Assembly (NCBI GenBank): GCA_964106645.2
Contig: OZ067052.1
DNA from: Podarcis pityusensis
Lineage: Eukaryota
Strand: one strand, 5' to 3'
DNA: 64,000 bases
Shown: positions 14,477-64,000 of the stretch, piece after piece
How the letters are laid out: each line of letters starts with the position of its first letter
Numbering within the stretch: the first letter of the stretch is position 1
Made by a program: the position numbers and the translations under genes
Notes under the pieces: model-generated
What the model was told of the DNA's origin: nothing
Seen by the model: the letters and a program-made list of their open reading frames with translations, nothing else
The model's database searches: none

Positions 14477-14525
14477 CTCTATGTCTGTTGGTAGTCTTGT
14501 CAAACATAAGCATGGCATCCTCTAC
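14477..14525 (-). CDS. MSI2: Musashi-2 internal coding exon (49 nt, RRM2; exon 7 in the human numbering as I recall it)
   Basis: Minus strand reads ccttgttgtgtcttgcag|GTA GAG GAT GCC ATG CTT ATG TTT GAC AAG ACT ACC AAC AGA CAT AGA G|gtaagt = VEDAMLMFDKTTNRHR(G), the Musashi RRM2 segment just before RNP1 (RGFGFVTF). VED matches MSI2 (MSI1 has VDD). Canonical AG/GT sites, phase 0 in and phase 1 out. Confidence 0.94.
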
Positions 14526-34815: not shown

Positions 34816-37701
34816 TAAAAATCATAATTTGTTTTGAAGAAATGTGCATTTATCATGAAGGGAAAAACATACACATATACACACTTCTGAACAGGGACGC
34901 TATTAATTTCAGCTCTCCAGAAGGTACTTTGAACACAAGGACCTGCCTAGGGCAACGTTTTGCTTCAGTCAAAAGAGGAGATTAAAAGAACCAGCTCTTC
35001 CCTGTGTAAATTTATCCTGCTCTGGAGGATCGGGAACCAAGGGAAATGCTCAGGGCCTTGTGTTGTATAGATGGAAACAAGGTATGTTGCTGTTGTTGGT
35101 GTGAGTGTGAGGGAGCAAGAGGAGGATGCTGGGGGGGGGGGGACCACACACAAGTACCAATGGCCCGAAAAGTATCTCAACCCACCCCACATTGCTTCCC
35201 TAAGGTTTCTTAAATAAAGGTGTTTTTCATACACAGATTATAACTGACTCACAACCTGAAAGTTAAAATAAGCCTACAACTCTAAGTATATTTTCTTGAG
35301 AGGGGATTCCGTTAAGTCCTGTTGAACTTATTTCAGAGGAAATATGCTTAGGAAAAAATTAAATTAAAAAGTCAAATTACTGTTATTTCTCCTTCCAAAA
35401 TCTAACATGGGCAAACCTCACTACCTAAACTGCACTCTGCTCCCCAGCCACAAATTGTTTCTGGTCACTGGGAGAAAATAGGGGGGCTTTTAATTAAATC
35501 CACAGGTCCTCTAATTCTGCTCCCATTTTAGCCAAATCATTCCCAGCCCCAGTACTCTAAAAACAGATCACTTTATCAGTCGCTTGCCACCCTCTCCAAC
35601 ATCAACATGAACAAGCAAATCACCACAAAGACTCCAATGCCAGCAGTTCCCCACCCCAAAGGAACTGCAGCCCACTCTGCATACTTTATTTTACACTATT
35701 TAGCAGCGGCAAGAGCAACACATTAGCCTGGTTTCGGAGGCTTTGCCATCATTTATTAATGAACAAGCTCACCTGCCATATAAAGGTTGTTCGAGGTCAT
35801 GCAAAACCTGAAACATTTTGTGCAGTACTGCAGCATGCCAATCACACACCCCAGACCCGTGCCTCTCCAGATCATTATAAGGTTTTGCTGACCCTACTAG
35901 GTGAAAATAATTATAGCTTGAAGGTTTCGTGGTTCTGTGCTCTATGCATCCTAGCTAAATTGCCTGTGTTGTGTTTTTTCTAAAAAAAATTCCAGTCCAT
36001 GTTCATTGTACTGTGTGTGTGTTTTGTTATAGTTATAAAAATATAAAACGCTCAGCTAAGAGGGATGAAACAAAAGGTACAAGGTAAGGGCCCCTCACCG
36101 ATTAACCTGCAAGAGAACTTAAAAAGAAAGTGTTCTAAGTGGGTGTTTGAGTGGGTAGAAGGTGTAACCTGAATTTTGGCTCCCTGTGCAGTATGGGCAG
36201 AGGGAGTGGGAGCTGAGGCCCTCCAGCAGAGGTTGGGCATCTGGACAGGTGTGGTTTAAGGCAAAAGCTGCCCAACAAATGACGCATAACCAAGTTCCAC
36301 ATCCTGTAACACCCAAGCATGATTAGGCAAGCCGTTCAACGTTAATTGTCAGAGTGGCCTCTGCCCAGGTGTTACTTGCTTTTGAAAGAGACTTGGAGAT
36401 CTCTGATGTGCACTTATCGGTGAGTAAATTGAGTTTTTACACGTCAGCAACGAAGAGCTCATCATTTTGACAGATAATTTGCTATCCATTTTCAAAACGC
36501 ATTTGAAAAAGGCAACACACTTCGGCTAATTTTTAATTACGCTTCACTAGCACTGGAGTAACACAGAAAGTCCTCGTGGTATTTAGACTGCCCCATTCCC
36601 CACCCCACCCCCAGCCACGAATGGAAGGACTGTAGCCACAAGGAGTTATTTTTATTTGAAATCTGACGCCCTGAGTTTCCTGTAACCATTTACGTCAGTG
36701 ATGACCTTCGAAAGTCAGGGTCAGCAATTGTTATTACTTTTGGCATATCTCCACTAAGAGGCATTAGCTACACATGGTATTGTCAGGGGAAGACTCCTGA
36801 AAACTTAGGAAGGCTGTCAATGCTTTGGGGGAGACAGAGCAGGATATCCATGAAGCAGACACCAATCTATTTCCCCTCTGCATGCACGTGATTTCCCCCA
36901 AATAGATCCAGCTGTGCCGAAACACCAGAACGAGAACATATGTTTTGAGCAGTGCACTTTCCTGAAGCTGCTGCCAAACACGTGTTGATGCTCTTCCACT
37001 GAAAACTGCTAGCATTGCCGCATGCAGAAACAACAGCAACATGTAGCACAGAAATGGGAATAGGTGAGGATCTTTAGCTGGGTAGGGACTGAAACAACCG
37101 CCTTGGAGTTGAACTGCACATGAAAGCTGTTCTCACTACGCCATAAGTGGCACGAGCTGACGTCCTTTACTTGCTTTGCACGTGATGTGGCTGTTGTCAG
37201 TTTAGGGTGAAGACAGACGTAACATTTTTACAAGTGCAACAGAAGCTGACTGCAGACAGAGCCGACCGACTGGCGCCTGCAATGTCACCGACAAACCCTC
37301 CCAAGTGATCCCCAGGGCAGTTTTGCACTTTCAAGAAAGTAATGATTATGATTAAGGAGAAGCACGAGTGGATTACAGAGAAACAGAGACACAGTACTTT
37401 AAGAAATGGAAAGGTAAACACCCTACCTAAAGCACAGGTGTAATATTATGTCTGTCTTCTCTCTCAGGCTGCTTCAGAAATCCTTTAAAAATGCATCCAA
37501 CAAATCTAGCGCATCTATGATATCTCTCACATATGTAGCTCTTTAGCATGTGGAGAGGGCTTCAAATCAGAGTTATCCTTACGACAACTCTTTAAGGGAG
37601 GCAAGCATTATTGCCCTCATTTTCCATGCGCAGCTTACCAAAGGTCTCCTTGTGGTCTCATAGCTGAGCATGGATTTGAACTAGGGGCTTCCCAGTGTAT
37701 A

Positions 37702-38115
37702 CCGTATTTTTCGCCCTATAGGATGCACTTTTTCCCCTCCAAAAATGAAGGGGAAATGTGTGTGCGTCCTATGGGGCGAATGCAGGCTTTCGCTGAAGCC
37801 TGGAGAGCGACAGGGGTCGGTGCGCACCACGGTGCGCAAGCCGTGGGAGAGCTGCACGACTTCGCACAGCTCTCCCACGGCTTGCGGACAGCTGCCTGAA
37901 CCCCGAAGCCTGGGACGTGCTGAGCTCAGCACGCCCCAGGCTTCGGGCTTCGCGCAGCTCTCCCACAGCTTGCGGATAGCAGCCTGTTCTGGGGGCTGTG
38001 GTCGGGGGAAGCTCGGGCTTCCCCCGCCCCAGCCCCGCACCTGGGGGGGAAATAATTTTTTTTCTTTATTTCCCCCCAAAAAAACTAGGTGCGCCCTATG
38101 GGGCGAAAAATACGG
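37702..38115. mobile_element. Tc2/pogo-type MITE inserted at TA within a decayed minus-strand SINE (~37570-38140)
   Basis: TA|CCGTATTTTTCGCCCTATAGG ... CCTATGGGGCGAAAAATACGG|TA. CpG-rich. Confidence 0.93.
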
Positions 38116-38383
38116 TAGTTAATCCTTTCAGCCACAATGATGTAACATTGCACAACTTTACTATCCGAGTAGCTGAACTGCTTCACAACCCCACACTCAT
38201 TCACCCAGAGCACTGCTTCTTTTTAACCACAGCATCTGAGCAAAGGTCACAGATCAAGTTATTTTAACTTCACAGCTTGTCAAAGCAATTAAGCCATTCA
38301 GGAGGTTATGCCTCTATGTGTAAATTGAAACCTGACTGGAATGAGATGGTCTGTGCCAACGCTTACCTGCCTAACTCACTTAC

Positions 38384-38390
38384 CTGAGGT
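38384..38390 (-). other. Candidate 7-nt microexon or recursive splice site in MSI2 intron (alternative donor extends the exon to 38367)
   Basis: Minus strand: ...ctttgccctttgtttcttttgctttctctccatatatttcag|ACCTCAG|gtaagtgagttaggcag|gtaagc. Confidence 0.45.
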
Positions 38391-40090
38391 CTGAAATATA
38401 TGGAGAGAAAGCAAAAGAAACAAAGGGCAAAGTGACCAAGAAGCAAAAGGCGCCTTAGTGGCAGAGACCAAGGGCCACACTGCTCTGTGGACGATCTTCC
38501 ATTGGTGGGCAGGACCAAAGGCAACCGCAAACAGAGCAGTAGATGGGACATTAACTTTCTGCAGTATGTTACATTTCAGCAATGCAAAGGCAGAGGTTTC
38601 TAAACACACACATTTCCCCATTCCCTATCCAGGCAAGCAAGATGCATTATCACAGTTCAATGATGCATTCCAGCTTTGCAAAACCACTCAAAGATGGGTC
38701 AGAGCAAGAGCAGTTTGAAGGTCCAGTATGTAGACTCAAAGCATGTCTACAGCCTACTAACTTATACACTACTGCCCACAGAAGGTATACATCTCAGCTG
38801 GGATCCAAATAACAGCACTAGTTCTGGACACACAAAGGGGTATTCAGATCTGTTTCTCAAACAGCGAGCCCCCAGTGTCACACAGTAAGCTGTCAGAAAG
38901 CTAAGGGGAGCACCTCAGTGTTAAGGGATTGGAGAAAGGTCCAATCATCAATCTTCAAAGATTGACAAGCTGTCCACTTGCTTGGGGCAGGGTGGAGGGA
39001 GAGAAATTGTTCCCTTGACTTCACTTTATAATATTGAAGGAACACAAGATACAATAATTAAGCCCTGATCTCGGTCGATTGTTCACAATGATAATTCCAC
39101 CTTTGTAATGCAAGCTTCAAATAAACCCCCTTTGTTCTGTCTTAGAACGCAGATTCTAGTATCATTCAAGTATATTAACTGGAGCCTATTACTGTCACAT
39201 AGAAATGCTCCCTGAGCCATAGCAAAGAACTCCCCAGACAAAACTTTATGTCATGTTAATCCAAGCTTTAATAACTAGGAGAATATATAACTGTATTCTA
39301 ATTGCGCTTTGTGCTTCTGCATACAAAAACCCCCTCAAAGATATAAAAAATGACATACGCAGCTTTCTTCAAACAGAGCAGTTTAACACCCCAAATTTGG
39401 GTGTTTGGGAGTTTTCTTTTCCCCTTCCTCAAAAGGGCAGTTTAAAACAGACTAGCATTAAAAAGGTGGTTGACAGTTAACGCCAAATAAAAAGGATCAG
39501 GCAGACACTAAGAGGGAAAAGGGGAGGGAAGGGACTGGGCACAGCTGTGATTTTGGCAACAGAAATCAACACCCTCTAAGAGAGCACTTAAACAGGAATC
39601 ATCAGTATTATGGAAATCTTTCATATTTAATTCTAGAGTGCCAGCTATAAAACCTTACAGGATAAAAGGACCATAACAAGACAGACCATTTTGTTAACTT
39701 GATGCTTTGGAAAATAAAGAGCCTGGGCAATTAACATACTGTATTTCCATATGAATGGCACAAGGCCCAGAGAGTGGTAACAAAGGCCTTCTTGGGTCAT
39801 ACTTCCCTTATCCTTAAAATGTGTTGGGATTTAAAATCTCTTTGCTATTGCTATTGATCTCCCTTAAGTCAAGAGTATGGTACACACCTAATTTCCAGTG
39901 GCAGTGTTCCACAGAACTGGGAAGGACTGGGTTTGCAAAGCTTGCTGAGTAACCTGGGACAGTTCTAATCTCTCAAAACTAATGCACATCATAGGGTTGT
40001 AAAGGGAGAGGGGCCTCTGTATGCACCCCAAATGCCTTGTAGGAAGGATGGGGCATATATGAGGGTGAAGGATTCATCTGTTTGAGAACT

Positions 40091-40462
40091 GTTGGCATCC
40101 ATCTGTCTTGAGAGACAATGAAATGCGCCTCCGGGGTGAAGTCAAACCGCTGGAGAATCACAGCGCCTGCTGTGGCTGCAGGGACTGGTAACTCCTAACT
40201 GCTGCCTCCCGTGTTGTTTTTGCTGCATTAGCAGCACCCAAGTGACATCTCCGGGATGCAAGCCTGGGCAGTGTGTATGGAGGTCCTGGGCTGCCCAAAC
40301 AACAATACCACCCTCTCGGCTTTGCTGATGTGGTCCAAAGGAAAGGAAAGCAGTATGTGTGGCACCAGCTTGGCTGCAGGAGTTGCCAGAAGGAGGCATA
40401 CAATACACCATCCAACCATCTTAGGGACTCTACTCCGGATTTGTGTAGGGTTTACTCCTTAG
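40091..40462 (-). mobile_element. Non-autonomous RTE-derived retroposon
   Basis: Reverse complement ends ...cattgtctctcaagacagatggatgccaac (RTE-type 3' end). Colinear with the second copy at 54331-55009. Confidence 0.7.
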
Positions 40463-40851
40463 TTGGGGGTGTGAAAGTAGCAGCCTTATACACAGTCAGA
40501 CCATGTCCTAGTAAAGTTTGAGTTGACAGTGGCAGTACCCCAATGAAGAGATAGGAGAGTGATTTTGATGGTCCTTCCAGAGAGATCTGTGGAATCATAT
40601 GGATACCTGAATGCTCTGGGGATTTTCTGATTGAAATGTTTGGTGCTCCTATGGAGGCTCTAGTTCCACTATGGAATGGTGAGATGGGCAGGAGCGTTGC
40701 CACAATTGCCACCAAGTGTCCTCTCAGGAACTGTGGAGCATGAAGTGCTCCCTTGTTTTCCAGTGAGCTTTGGATGATGAAACAGGCAAGATAGCAGGTA
40801 GAGTGTAGACAGTGACTGTCTAGCAATGAATGTGCTATAGCACATAATTGT

Positions 40852-40869
40852 GCCCACCAGGTGGCGGCA
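40852..40869 (+). promoter_or_regulatory. CTCF core motif
   Basis: GCCCACCAGGTGGCGGCA matches CCASYAGRKGGCRS fully. Confidence 0.55.
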
Positions 40870-40911
40870 GTGAAGAAATACCACTTCTTCTGCACAACTG
40901 GGTCCTCTGGC

Positions 40912-41078
40912 GTAGTTGTAGAGTTGGAAGGAACCCCAAGGGACATCTTGTCCAACCCCTGCAGTGCAGAAACCACAACTAAAGCAAACATGATAAATGG
41001 CCATCCAACCTCTGTTTAAAAACCTCCAATGAAGGAAAGTCCACAACCTTCCAAAATAGCCCATCCTGCTGTTGAACA
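40912..41078 (-). mobile_element. CR1 3' end
   Basis: gtagagttggaagg...gtccaacccctgc...ggccatccaacctctgtttaaaaacctcc, the reverse of the 13997-type element. Confidence 0.85.
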
Positions 41079-48103: not shown

Positions 48104-48220
48104 GTACGGAGTACCATCTGAGGAATGGAACTTACACTTACACGCACACACACACACGCACAGAGGTAACTGGTAACTCCAGTCAAAGGTGAAACACAAA
48201 CACTATCTACCAGATCTACA

Positions 48221-55009: not shown

Positions 55010-56157
55010 TTAGATTCATATTGGACAGGACTCCACATAATTATGATCATACACACTAAAAGATACAGGCTTCTGAGGGGGAAAGTAAAATACAAATGAA
55101 ATGTCTATTAAAAAAAAAGATGAAACACAAAAGTTATGAAACTCATTTCCTGACCTTTGCATGACATAAGCATTGAGACAAATTCCTTTATATAATCCTT
55201 TTGGAAATAAATATATTGTATGTATGTAGGATCTATTTTAGGAATCCCACTGTATCATCCAACAATTAAATTGTTTCAATATTTACAGTGCCTTAGGCTG
55301 CCAAGTTTGAAGTTAGAGTAATGCAATAGTTATTTAAAAGAAAAAACTAGAAACAAGGAGGTAAAAGAGCTCCCAGAGGCCCCTGGGCGGAAGTACCCAA
55401 TGTCAGGAAGCATTTGTTTTTATTTCCTCTGCGCCAAATGAATTTTACTCGTGGCGGTGGTTTAAAGCTGGACCGAATCCATACAGAAGCTAACCAGAAG
55501 CATTTGTTTCTTAAATAAATGCCTCTGCTGGGAACAAGCTATATATAAAGAGGAAACCTCTTTTCTTAACAGCCATATGCTACACAGCCAGCATGCTATT
55601 TACTGCTTTAAAAATAAAATAAAAAGTGAGAGAGGTGAGTAGCTTTAGGTTCCCAACAAAAAGCATTCAACGCATACACAAACACCCCCATGCACATTTC
55701 TGCATTTGGATATTTCAATCGAGATACTAAAAATTCAAGCCAGGATCACGACTCCCCTCAGAGTTTGAATGTGAGCTTTACACACCACACATTCAGGAAA
55801 GGGATAGGAGAGTGACGCATGCCTAGAATGGCATTTCTGCTTTTCCTGAGTGAATAGTTTGATGCCACCCCAGCTCCCTTTCCCCACTGTAACAAAGTAC
55901 ATGTAACTGCAATAATCACGTATTCTCCCCATTTACCCCTACACCTTTTACAGCTAAAAGCAATAATTGACATCACTGTCTCCGATACCATGTTCACTAA
56001 AGTATGCCAAAAGCCACTTATTATGTCAAGAATGCAGGTTGGGAAGAACAACATGAAATGTGGCCCTTCCTAGACTATACTTGTGAAATGCTCACATGGT
56101 GTGACATGCCATCTTAAGTTCCCCAACAAATAAAATATGATTTGCTTTTTCAAAGTA

Positions 56158-56430
56158 CCGTATTTTTCGCCCTATAGGACGCAGAGAGCTCAGCGCGCCC
56201 AGGCTTCAGCATGCAGGCAACTCTCCGCAAGCCGCAGGAGCCCAGCGCCGGGCTCCCGCGCCTTGCGGAGAGCTGCGCAAAGCCTGGAGAGCGAGAGGGG
56301 TCGGTGCGCACCGACCCCTCTCGCTCTCCAGGCTTCAGCGAAAGCCTGCATTCGCCCCATAGGACACACACACATTTCCCCTTCATTTTTGGAGGGGGAA
56401 AAGTGCGTCCTATAGGGCAAAAAAATACGG
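56158..56430. mobile_element. Tc2/pogo-type MITE, same family as 37702-38115, inverted
   Basis: TA|CCGTATTTTTCGCCCTATAGGACGCA ... TGCGTCCTATAGGGCAAAAAAATACGG|TA. Confidence 0.93.
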
Positions 56431-58452
56431 TAACTTAATTTTGGTTTGCCAATACATTAGAGGTGCATTCTGAGAAGAAGTTCTGTGCTTCAGACTAAAA
56501 TGTGCAAGTTCCTGATTATAATTCACTTTTTGGAATGGCTGTGTTAAATGGTTCGGCTTCAGATATCATGCAGGAAGGGGTTAAATTAAGAGATTACTAA
56601 TCTGGCCATCAAGTGAACAAGACCTTGCATAAGATTATCAGGGCAGCCAGACAGAGGCAGCTGCCTCCATCAACAGCACAGAACCAGCTCATGCCAAGGC
56701 TTTAACCCTTTCCTTGCACAATTATTTATGCGAGTGTGAACAAATGAAATGGCAGGGCCCACAGTATGCTCATTCACACCCTTTGTTATCTGCAGCTAAA
56801 CGTAATGGAAAAAATTGACTGTTTGCTTGACGCAATAGGGCATGACTCTGTTTACACAGAAATAATAGCTAAACACTGATGGATTCTAAATCTCCATTAC
56901 GGCAAAAGATTTGAAAGAGTAAAGCGGTTAGGGAAAATAATTAGCTCTCCCGTTTGGATTTTTAAAGAGCTTTTCACACATTTGATGGAACGACGTGGCC
57001 CTCTTCACTACTGGTTGGCTCTGCAGGGATAGTCAGTTTTAAATGCACAACCAAAGGAACCCTTCAGCTCACATAAGGATAAGTGAAGCAGGGCCATTCT
57101 TTGCCATTAATCCTGAAGGCCTGGAAAGCCCCAGGAGATGTCCGATCTATGCTTCCTAAATGCTGTTGGACTACCTCATAACAGAAATAATAAATTCTGA
57201 TATAAAGCCAGGCTTCAATGAGATAAATATATAAGCTCTACATGTCACTGCTTGGATTTGCAGGGCTGAAAAGCACTGTTTCCTCAGTGCTGCACACCTA
57301 CAGACAGATGGCAACAACTAAGGCTGTGCTGAATTTCCACCCATTTTTTTTTTCCTCCCAGCAAAAGGGTATGGAGGAGTTTCACAATGCTAACACCCAC
57401 CTGCTTGTTAATGTACCACTTGACACCTGCTCACAGAGGCTTAGGCACTGGGTTTGCTTCTGTTCAATACACAAAGCCTTCTTACTGAGGAAATCCCAGC
57501 CACTCAAGAATCACATGATCAGAGTGATGACATCACATTATGACAGAGCCTTGGCTACATGATACCGTAGGGAGATTAAAGTTTCTTGCATTTGCTGTGC
57601 ATGGGGGGATGTTTGCAACCCAAACCATTGTGAATATGGGAGGAGGTGTCATTTTTGCACTGTGTGAGAGCGATATTTTAATAAAACATCTCCTCCCACA
57701 CACCACGTTTTCTTCTCCACCCTATCAGCAGGTATCAATGTCATTAATTTACAGGTGAAAATATCTGATGGAGAAAGGCATTCCCATGAGATTATATGGA
57801 ATGCCAGGAGGGGGAAAAACCTAGGGGTTGGCAAGGATGGCCCCTGCCAAGGGCGCAGGCCCAGGGGGGGCACAAAACTCACACTTCTCCACTCTGGCTC
57901 AAAGTAATTGCCCATTTGCCTGCTCCCTGGGCAACTCCTGTGCTGCTCAGGGTTTTCCAGGAGGAAGGCAGGAATAGCTCCTTGCCAAGGGTGCAAGGGA
58001 GTCTAAGTATGCCTCTGAATGGCAGTAGAAAGACAGATGATCAGTTTTTTCTTGCTTGCACTTCCTCACTTCTGCCCTGCCCATGCAAACATACGAATTA
58101 GGTTTTTTTTAACTCAGAAGGAACCAGATCAGGGTTGTTATTGTTCACTGAGTTCACTCCTAGTATTCCTGTTTGCTGAGTTTCCTATATTATCAAAATA
58201 CAATAAAAGCATAGAAGCATGTGAGCACTATAGAAAAAAAGTAATGACTTGTATATTGAAGAACATTTAAAACTACAATTACAAATCCATTTGAATCAAG
58301 AACAACTGATCAGAGGAATGAACTCAACCACCTGATACAGCACTTTTAACAAGTTTCTAATTATCAAATGCCTGGCGCATTTTGTAGAAATGTGTAAAAG
58401 GATTATGTAAAAATGCCATAAATGCTTCTGATATACCCCAAAAACCCAGCTA

Positions 58453-58652
58453 NNNNNNNNNNNNNNNNNNNNNNNNNNNNNNNNNNNNNNNNNNNNNNNN
58501 NNNNNNNNNNNNNNNNNNNNNNNNNNNNNNNNNNNNNNNNNNNNNNNNNNNNNNNNNNNNNNNNNNNNNNNNNNNNNNNNNNNNNNNNNNNNNNNNNNNN
58601 NNNNNNNNNNNNNNNNNNNNNNNNNNNNNNNNNNNNNNNNNNNNNNNNNNNN
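58453..58652. other. Assembly gap (200 N)
   Basis: Direct read. The round size suggests an unsized scaffold join. Confidence 0.99.
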
Positions 58653-63871: not shown

Positions 63872-64000
63872 TAATAATAATAATAATAATAATAATAATG
63901 ATAATAATAATATTTATATCCCGCCCTCCCCAGCCGAAGCCGGGCTCAGGGCGGCTAACAACACTAAAATAGTGCAACATTCTAAAAACATTATAAAAAT
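63872..64000 (-). mobile_element. L2-type 3' end with (TAA)n tail, truncated by the window edge
   Basis: (taa)n followed by atttatatcccgccct...ctcagggcggctaaca. Confidence 0.75.

What the first reader, a model, noticed from the sequence alone, without database searches (positions are those of the whole stretch)
38361..38460. Deep-intronic splice module in MSI2: poison microexon or recursive-splicing (ratchet) site
Seen, on the MSI2 sense strand ~24 kb upstream of the 49-nt exon: a branch-like CACTAAG (38460-38454), a ~60-nt AG-free pyrimidine tract with several UGC, then CAG|ACCTCAG|GTAAGT (perfect donor) and, 17 nt later, a second CAG|GTAAGC. The intron is phase 0, so every exonic reading is non-productive. 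The 7-nt form shifts frame to a TGA inside the coding exon (14502-14500). The 24-nt form has an in-frame TGA (38378-38376). If the second AG is the acceptor, AG|GTAAGT is a zero-length recursive site followed by a 17-nt RS-exon. Established: UGC near the 3'ss marks SRRM3/4-dependent neural microexons; RBP genes often autoregulate through poison exons; Musashi binds (G/A)U1-3AG and promotes microexon inclusion in photoreceptors. A GUUAG lies between the two donors. Inference: an NMD-coupled or recursive-splicing switch, possibly Musashi-autoregulated.
Basis: partly seen in the sequence, partly recalled or inferred. Interest (0 to 1): 0.8.

Follow-up and report, generated by a model that had tools for sequence, protein, structure and literature searches.

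The report
Unproven exon-like module in MSI2 intron
Deep inside a long intron of the Musashi-2 gene sits a very strong but untested look-alike of a tiny exon that would wreck the reading frame if used; I could get no evidence that cells use it or that evolution keeps it, so it most likely is a silent or rarely used pseudo-exon.

Summary

What stands out:
- The core module is rare. It is a strong acceptor after a 61-nt AG-free, 80% pyrimidine tract, followed by two near-consensus donors 7 and 24 nt downstream.
- I expect about 0.01-0.09 single-donor modules per 128 kb, and about 1e-4 or fewer with two donors. These odds are post hoc.

What does not stand out:
- UGC, the single GUUAG, UAG/Musashi, RBFOX and YCAY motifs are at background frequency.
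- RNA folding is no better than shuffled sequence (z = -0.06).
- As a zero-length AG|GT ratchet the site is unexceptional. The acceptor at the second AG scores 4.9 against 11.6 for the first, and the antisense strand yields equally good AGGT sites.

What could not be tested: use and conservation.
- No vertebrate genomes are within reach.
- The ORF search and the metagenome scan gave nothing relevant.

Supplementary tables of a 2018 paper list two conserved candidate recursive sites in a 128-kb human MSI2 intron. Orthology to this site is unknown.

Verdict: the sequence feature is real and its function is unshown. It is most likely a silent or noise-level pseudo-exon. A regulated poison microexon remains a live minority reading.

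The parts
38454..38460 (-). Branch-point-like CACTAAG (5 of 7 matches to UACUAAC). The branch A at 38455 is 64 nt from the acceptor G.
   Evidence: It is the only such motif in the 100 nt upstream. No strict yUnAy motif is present.
38393..38453 (-). 61-nt AG-free tract, 80% pyrimidine, with three TGC and UCUU/CUCUC stretches. It ends in the C of the acceptor CAG.
   Evidence: There are 8 such tracts on the two strands of the window.
38391..38393 (-). First acceptor CAG. The exon would start at 38390.
   Evidence: Weight-matrix score 11.6, against 12.1 for the real MSI2 exon acceptor.
38384..38390 (-). Possible 7-nt exon ACCTCAG. Its last AG (38385-38384) followed by GT is the proposed zero-length recursive site.
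   Evidence: The acceptor score at this second AG is only 4.9.
38378..38383 (-). Donor 1: CAG|GTAAGT, fully complementary to the U1 5' end.
   Evidence: Score 12.7, the best of 6,718 GT sites on both strands.
38376..38378 (-). In-frame TGA of the 24-nt form.
   Evidence: Read in phase 0.
38371..38375 (-). GTTAG, a single Musashi-type motif between the donors.
   Evidence: 37 GTTAG on this strand of the window. Not enriched.
38367..38390 (-). Possible 24-nt exon. Its last 17 nt (38383-38367) form the proposed RS-exon.
38361..38366 (-). Donor 2: CAG|GTAAGC.
   Evidence: Score 11.2. No tandem-duplication signal beyond the shared 8-mer.
14477..14525 (-). The only MSI2 coding exon in the window: 49 nt, encoding VEDAMLMFDKTTNRHR plus the first base of the next codon. 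It is the downstream partner of any splice from the module.
14500..14502 (-). TGA reached in the shifted frame if the 7-nt form is included.
   Evidence: Read, exon by exon.

Best explanation
This is an exon-like module (pseudo-exon) in a long MSI2 intron. The intron is at least 49.5 kb long.

The sequence shows a strong 3' splice site followed at 7 and 24 nt by two near-consensus 5' splice sites. The rest is inference.
- On the pre-mRNA the donors probably bind U1, and the tract probably binds U2AF and/or PTB.
- The sites are too close together for ordinary exon definition.
- The module is therefore skipped by default.
- At most it is spliced in at a low, unregulated level, giving 7- or 24-nt insertions that end in a premature stop and are removed by NMD.

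I see no sign that it is a dedicated, Musashi-controlled switch.
For: - Motifs and frames are exact.
- Only the core splice signals stand out.
- Every proposed regulatory add-on is at background: UAG/Musashi, RBFOX, YCAY and UGC.
- There is no special RNA structure (z = -0.06).
- The window holds other exon-like modules at slightly lower thresholds: 30660 on the minus strand and 9990 on the plus strand.
- A MITE sits 250 nt downstream, so the neighbourhood tolerates insertions.
- Published work stresses that real recursive sites and neural microexons are highly conserved, and that efficient intronic recursive sites are few. The cited figures are about 10 in human in early work and 20 in mouse brain. 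The prior for any one unvalidated site is therefore low.
Against: - The joint module is rarer than simple chance predicts: about 1e-4 per 128 kb with both donors. The second donor is not explained by a tandem duplication.
- The architecture matches what is described for SRRM3/4-type microexons: a 64-nt branch-to-AG distance, a strong donor, and UGC between branch point and AG.
- Human MSI2 does carry conserved candidate recursive sites in a 128-kb intron.
- Absence of use was not shown, because no RNA data could be laid.
Confidence: 0.5

Rival explanations
1. This is a regulated poison microexon. In cells with SRRM3/4 (or low PTBP1) the 7- or 24-nt exon is included. Both forms give a premature stop, so MSI2 mRNA is lowered by NMD. 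The second donor serves as an alternative donor or as a U1-binding enhancer.
For: - Length is 27 nt or less, the donor is consensus, the branch-to-AG distance is 64 nt, the tract is 61 nt and AG-free, and there are three UGC plus UCUU/CUCUC stretches.
- This fits the published core architecture.
- Both forms are non-productive.
- The module is rare.
- An NMD-sensitive microexon has a precedent in BAK1.
Against: - The UGC count is reached in 10% of background windows, and the nearest UGC is 23 nt from the AG, inside rather than after the pyrimidine tract.
- No conservation or RNA evidence could be obtained.
- Neural microexons are as a rule frame-preserving and deeply conserved.
- No paper in the library links MSI2 to a poison exon in this intron.
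Confidence: 0.22
2. This is a recursive-splicing ratchet. The upstream exon is first joined at the AG at 38385-38384, which rebuilds a donor with GTAAGT. The rest of the intron (23.9 kb) is then removed. The 17-nt stretch up to the second donor acts as the RS-exon.
For: - AGGTAAGT lies in an intron of at least 49.5 kb, more than 2 kb from any exon, with a downstream donor.
- AGGTAAGT is the motif enriched at mouse recursive sites.
- Human MSI2 has two conserved candidate recursive sites with junction reads, one with a program-detected sawtooth, in a 128-kb intron.
Against: - A CAG 7 nt upstream, directly after the tract, should be chosen first. The acceptor score at the AGGT is 4.9 against 11.6.
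- The site ranks 4th of 243 sense AGGT sites, and the antisense strand gives equal scores.
- A 17-nt RS-exon is very short for the exon definition that vertebrate recursive splicing relies on.
- Mouse recursive sites prefer the first two introns. This intron precedes an exon encoding RRM2.
- The human sites lie 3.2 and 18.9 kb from the intron's 5' end, whereas this site is at least 25.5 kb from its own.
Confidence: 0.08
3. Musashi autoregulation: MSI1/2 bind the GUUAG between the donors and promote inclusion of the poison form, giving negative feedback.
For: One GTTAG lies at 38375-38371. Musashi promotes exon inclusion from UAG sites in the proximal downstream intron.
Against: - There is a single motif, and 37 GTTAG on this strand of the window.
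- (G/A)U1-3AG counts downstream of either donor are at background: 1 to 2 against a mean of 0.77 per 100 nt, with 17-55% of windows equal or higher.
- No paper found reports splicing autoregulation of MSI2.
Confidence: 0.03
4. The tandem donors act without being spliced. They could be U1 landing sites that protect the long intron from premature cleavage and polyadenylation (telescripting). An AATAAA lies about 320 nt downstream, inside the MITE. Alternatively they could be part of a decoy exon that slows intron removal.
For: Two donors scoring 12.7 and 11.2 lie 17 nt apart. An AATAAA lies downstream, near 38068. Decoy and poison exons are named among conserved exon-like intron elements.
Against: Nothing distinguishes it from chance donors. 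The acceptor and long tract would have no explanation.
Confidence: 0.08

Closest known systems
Candidate recursive splice sites of human MSI2 (Zhang et al. 2018, PLoS Genet, PMC6110456, S2 and S3 Tables): hg19 chr17:55,482,060 and 55,497,715 in the 128,204-nt intron 55,478,832-55,607,036
   Same: Same gene. AGGT sites deep in a very long intron. The second human site also has a weak acceptor score (5.26).
   Different: - The human sites have phastCons 1 and junction reads. The first also has a program-detected sawtooth in two cell types. Neither is known for this site.
- Whether the human intron is the orthologous one is unknown.
- The distances to the intron's 5' end do not match: 3.2 and 18.9 kb against at least 25.5 kb.
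Cryptic RS-exons of long vertebrate genes such as CADM2 (Sibley 2015, as described in Blazquez 2018, PMC6224609)
   Same: A pyrimidine tract followed by AG|GTAAGT with a competing downstream donor. Inclusion would be non-productive.
   Different: Here an extra CAG sits between the tract and the AGGT. The RS-exon would be only 17 nt. There are no conservation or junction data.
SRRM3/4-dependent neural microexons
   Same: Length of 27 nt or less, strong donor, extended branch-to-AG region, and UGC between branch point and AG.
   Different: - Those microexons are typically frame-preserving and deeply conserved.
- This one shifts the frame (7 nt) or carries a stop (24 nt).
- The UGC sits within the tract at -23, not after it.
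- Neural inclusion is untested.
NMD-coupled microexon of BAK1 and poison exons of RNA-binding-protein genes
   Same: A short exon whose inclusion gives a premature stop in a regulator gene.
   Different: Those are shown in RNA and are conserved. For MSI2 no such exon in this intron is reported in the library searched.
Intronic pseudo-exons and EJC-repressed cryptic microexons (PMC8819188, PMC6224609)
   Same: Consensus-like sites in a deep intron. A donor within 15 nt of a would-be exon start is the setting in which a microexon arises by re-splicing.
   Different: Pseudo-exons are defined by non-use in normal cells, which was not shown here.

Membership tests
Vertebrate recursive splice site with RS-exon | Juxtaposed AG|GT, preferably AGGTAAGT | tested here: met
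   AG at 38385-38384 followed by GTAAGT at 38383-38378. Motif definition.
Vertebrate recursive splice site with RS-exon | Strong 3' splice site at that AG, with a pyrimidine-rich 20 nt upstream | tested here: inconclusive
   The approximate matrix gives 4.9, against 11.6 for the CAG 7 nt upstream. MaxEntScan was not available. The 20 nt upstream are 70% pyrimidine but contain an AG.
Vertebrate recursive splice site with RS-exon | Long intron, far from annotated splice sites | tested here: met
   No other MSI2 exon lies between 14525 and 64000, so the intron is at least 49.5 kb. The site is 23.9 kb from the exon.
Vertebrate recursive splice site with RS-exon | Downstream donor that defines an RS-exon | tested here: inconclusive
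   A donor is present at +17, but 17 nt is far shorter than an exon-definition unit. The papers searched for RS-exons up to 350-500 nt.
Vertebrate recursive splice site with RS-exon | High evolutionary conservation | not testable with these tools
   No vertebrate genome collection is available. The ORF search gave nothing, and all metagenome matches were unrelated.
Vertebrate recursive splice site with RS-exon | Recursive junction reads or sawtooth in nascent or total RNA | not testable with these tools
SRRM3/4-dependent neural microexon | Exon of 3-27 nt with a strong 5' splice site | tested here: met
   7 or 24 nt. Donors score 12.7 and 11.2 against 11.8 for the real exon.
SRRM3/4-dependent neural microexon | Extended branch-point-to-AG region | tested here: met
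   Branch-like A 64 nt from the AG, with a 61-nt AG-free tract. Published medians are 45-47 nt against 34 nt.
SRRM3/4-dependent neural microexon | UGC between branch point and AG at a position that matters | tested here: inconclusive
   Three UGC, the nearest at -23. About 10% of background windows have as many. The functional UGC usually lies between the end of the tract and the AG.
SRRM3/4-dependent neural microexon | Frame-preserving coding insert, conserved in vertebrates, neural inclusion | tested here: not met
   The frame part is not met: 7 nt shifts the frame and 24 nt holds a TGA. Conservation and inclusion could not be tested.
Autoregulatory poison exon of an RNA-binding-protein gene | Inclusion gives a premature stop upstream of further exon junctions | tested here: met
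   TGA at 38378-38376 (24-nt form) or at 14502-14500 (7-nt form). The 49-nt exon has its own donor, so at least one junction follows.
Autoregulatory poison exon of an RNA-binding-protein gene | Binding sites of the gene's own protein enriched at the exon | tested here: not met
   UAG and (G/A)U1-3AG are at background in all flanks.
Autoregulatory poison exon of an RNA-binding-protein gene | Included isoform seen in RNA and stabilised when NMD is blocked | not testable with these tools
   No reads could be laid.
Intronic pseudo-exon | Consensus-like acceptor and donor at exon-like spacing in an intron | tested here: met
Intronic pseudo-exon | Not included in mature mRNA of normal cells | not testable with these tools
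   No RNA data.

The most novel reading that the evidence does not exclude
The module is a conserved neural-type poison microexon with tandem donors. On that reading, SRRM3/4 or loss of PTBP1 includes it, which switches MSI2 off through NMD as progenitors become neurons. The same site could double as a stepping stone for stepwise removal of the long intron.
Probability: 0.12. Interest if true: 0.6.

Novelty: new member of a known kind. Interest (0 to 1): 0.3.

Why it matters
Musashi-2 is a dosage-sensitive regulator of stem-cell and neural fate, and of leukaemia. A splice-coupled off-switch inside the gene would be a new control point and a possible target for antisense oligonucleotides. A frame-breaking microexon of the neural type would add a rare kind of event; I found only BAK1 named this way in the library searched. 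As it stands the site is only a strong sequence prediction. Its main value is as a precise, cheap target for a junction-read or RT-PCR test.

Tried and rejected
1. Reads. The look-up of sequencing runs listed no holder on record as RNA, plus three bulk RNA raw-read runs of a close relative.
   - The Rfam call stopped at 39145. I only read those places in the window.
   - The small 'RNA?' runs hold 5-8% of the words. This may simply be the high-copy MITE, which makes up 8% of the stretch. That is an inference, not a test.
2. The 81-aa ORF across the module found no homologue. This is uninformative, because the collection does not seem to hold such ORFs of this genome.
3. The metagenome pattern scan gave 9 loci, all unrelated in their flanks. 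None was taken for human and none was pursued.
4. Rfam on 30000-39145 gave only sub-threshold hairpin matches in the MITE and at 31976-32040.
5. Repeat origin was rejected within the window: the module has no second copy there.
6. Tandem duplication as the source of the second donor was rejected.
7. A special RNA structure was rejected.
8. A U1 snRNA gene on the plus strand was rejected: the similarity is only the 9-mer complement, and there was no Rfam hit.
9. An alternative promoter or alternative last exon was considered and not favoured. There is a CCAAT and a TATA-like run upstream and an AATAAA about 320 nt downstream, but two strong donors lie in between.
10. The order-5 Markov run is void because of an integer overflow. 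Only orders 1 and 3 are used.
11. I built and searched no joined (spliced) model. Frames were read exon by exon.
12. Papers: no hit for MSI2 with 'recursive splicing' in main texts. The MSI2 entries were found only in supplementary tables.

Full report
**The observation**

- CACTAAG at 38460-38454.
- A tract from 38453 to 38393 with no AG.
- CAG at 38393-38391, ACCTCAG at 38390-38384, and GTAAGT at 38383-38378.
- A second CAG|GTAAGC whose GT (38366-38365) lies 17 nt after the first.

One search measures the tract at 61 nt and 80% pyrimidine, with three TGC. The only MSI2 coding exon in the window is the 49-nt exon at 14525-14477. It begins on a full codon, so the intron is phase 0. No other MSI2 exon lies between it and position 64000, so the intron is at least 49.5 kb.

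Read exon by exon, the 24-nt form meets the TGA at 38378-38376. The 7-nt form shifts the frame to the TGA at 14502-14500. Both stops lie upstream of at least one further junction. I built and searched no joined model.

**Is it more than chance?**

I scored all AG and GT sites on both strands with approximate weight matrices written from general knowledge. These are not MaxEntScan scores.
- The acceptor at 38390 scores 11.6, against 12.1 for the real exon.
- The donors score 12.7 and 11.2, against 11.8 for the real donor.
- 42 acceptors and 10 donors in 128 kb reach those levels, and donor 1 is the best of 6,718 GT sites.

Independence gives about 0.09 microexon-sized acceptor-donor pairs per 128 kb, and about 1e-4 with two donors. 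Order-1 and order-3 Markov simulations of 12 Mb each gave one single-donor pair (0.011 per 128 kb) and no double. The order-5 run is void.

With looser thresholds the window has two further modules, at 30660 on the minus strand and 9990 on the plus strand. The literal pattern appeared in none of 100 shuffles. The second donor is not the trace of a tandem duplication, and the module is not a repeat within the window.

The core is therefore truly unusual. The pattern was, however, chosen after seeing it, and donor-like motifs do cluster elsewhere in the window (a GTAAGTAAGT run with GTAAGT starting at 48141 and 48135).

**The proposed regulatory trimmings**

None of them stands out.
- (G/A)U1-3AG and UAG downstream of either donor are at the window's background level.
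- The single GTTAG is one of 37 on this strand.
- There is no (U)GCAUG, and YCAY is at background.
- Three UGC in the tract are matched or exceeded in 10% of background windows.
- Folding gives z = -0.06.

Musashi activates exons from UAG sites in the proximal downstream intron. The autoregulation idea therefore has no support in the sequence, though one site cannot be excluded.

**Which splice reading fits best**

As a zero-length ratchet the site is ordinary.
- The AG of the AGGT lies 7 nt after another CAG that directly follows the tract, and its acceptor score is 4.9.
- It ranks 4th of 243 sense AGGT sites, and the antisense strand gives equally good ones.
- The RS-exon would be 17 nt. Vertebrate recursive splicing starts by defining the RS-exon.

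As a microexon the module matches the published core architecture: a long branch-to-AG distance (64 nt, against medians of 45-47), a strong donor, and UGC between branch point and AG. It breaks the rule that such exons preserve the frame.

A donor within 15 nt of a would-be exon start is also the setting in which re-splicing yields cryptic microexons, normally repressed by the exon junction complex.

**Use and conservation**

These could not be tested.
- The look-up of sequencing runs listed no RNA holder, plus raw RNA runs of a close relative.
- An ORF across the module found no relatives, which is uninformative.
- A degenerate pattern scan of metagenome contigs gave nine unrelated loci.
- Rfam found nothing relevant.

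**Literature**

No main text links MSI2 to recursive splicing or to a poison exon in this intron. The supplementary tables of Zhang et al. 2018 do list two candidate recursive sites in a 128,204-nt human MSI2 intron.
- Both have phastCons 1.
- One has acceptor strength 9.47 and a program-detected sawtooth in two cell types.
- The other has acceptor strength 5.26.

I cannot tell whether that is the orthologous intron. The distances from the intron's 5' end (3.2 and 18.9 kb) do not match this site, which is at least 25.5 kb from its own. Efficient recursive sites are few and highly conserved. I did not test it.

**Verdict**

The sequence feature is real and rare, but its function is unshown.
- Most likely (about 0.5): a pseudo-exon that is skipped by default or used at noise level, giving NMD substrates.
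- About 0.22: a regulated poison microexon.
- About 0.08: a ratchet.
- About 0.08: a non-spliced U1 or decoy role.
- About 0.03: Musashi feedback.

Junction reads and a multi-species alignment would settle it.

Noticed in passing
window 37700-38117 and 56153-56432: A 418-bp element with roughly 29-nt terminal inverted repeats (arms 37700-37728 and 38089-38117, about 90% matched) and GC-rich internal palindromes lies 250 nt downstream of the module. It looks like a MITE. A second, partial copy (95% identical over 130 nt) is at 56153-56432. Its hairpins give sub-threshold miRNA-family matches in Rfam.
   Followed up: partly
window 14525-14518 (minus strand): The real 49-nt MSI2 exon itself starts with GT after its acceptor AG (AG|GTAGAG). 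That makes it a 'putative RS-exon' in the sense of Blazquez et al. 2018. The donor score of the start, taken with the three intron bases before it, is low (5.4).
   Followed up: no
window 39146-39199: The reads tool would not lay these 54 places; its message says the filter also trips by chance. They lie about 750 nt upstream of the module in the sense direction and hold no AGGT. I read them in the window only and sent them to no search.
   Followed up: no
window 30660 (minus strand) and 9990 (plus strand): Two further exon-like modules at looser thresholds. The first would be a 39-nt exon ending in CAG|GTGTGT on the sense strand. The second would be a 36-nt exon ending in GAG|GTAGGT on the antisense strand.
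   Followed up: no
window 31976-32040 (plus strand): A hairpin with a weak match to a miRNA family (mir-H20, 37 bits, E = 4e-4). This is far below the gathering score of 99 and probably chance.
   Followed up: no
window 58453-58652: A run of 200 N (assembly gap or mask) inside the same intron. I left it as it is.
   Followed up: no
stretch 36000-41000: One DNA run (organism C) holds 93% of the sampled words. Runs of organisms A, D and E hold about 50%, which suggests close relatives about 2% apart. The available RNA runs are of organism A, not of the best holder.
   Followed up: no
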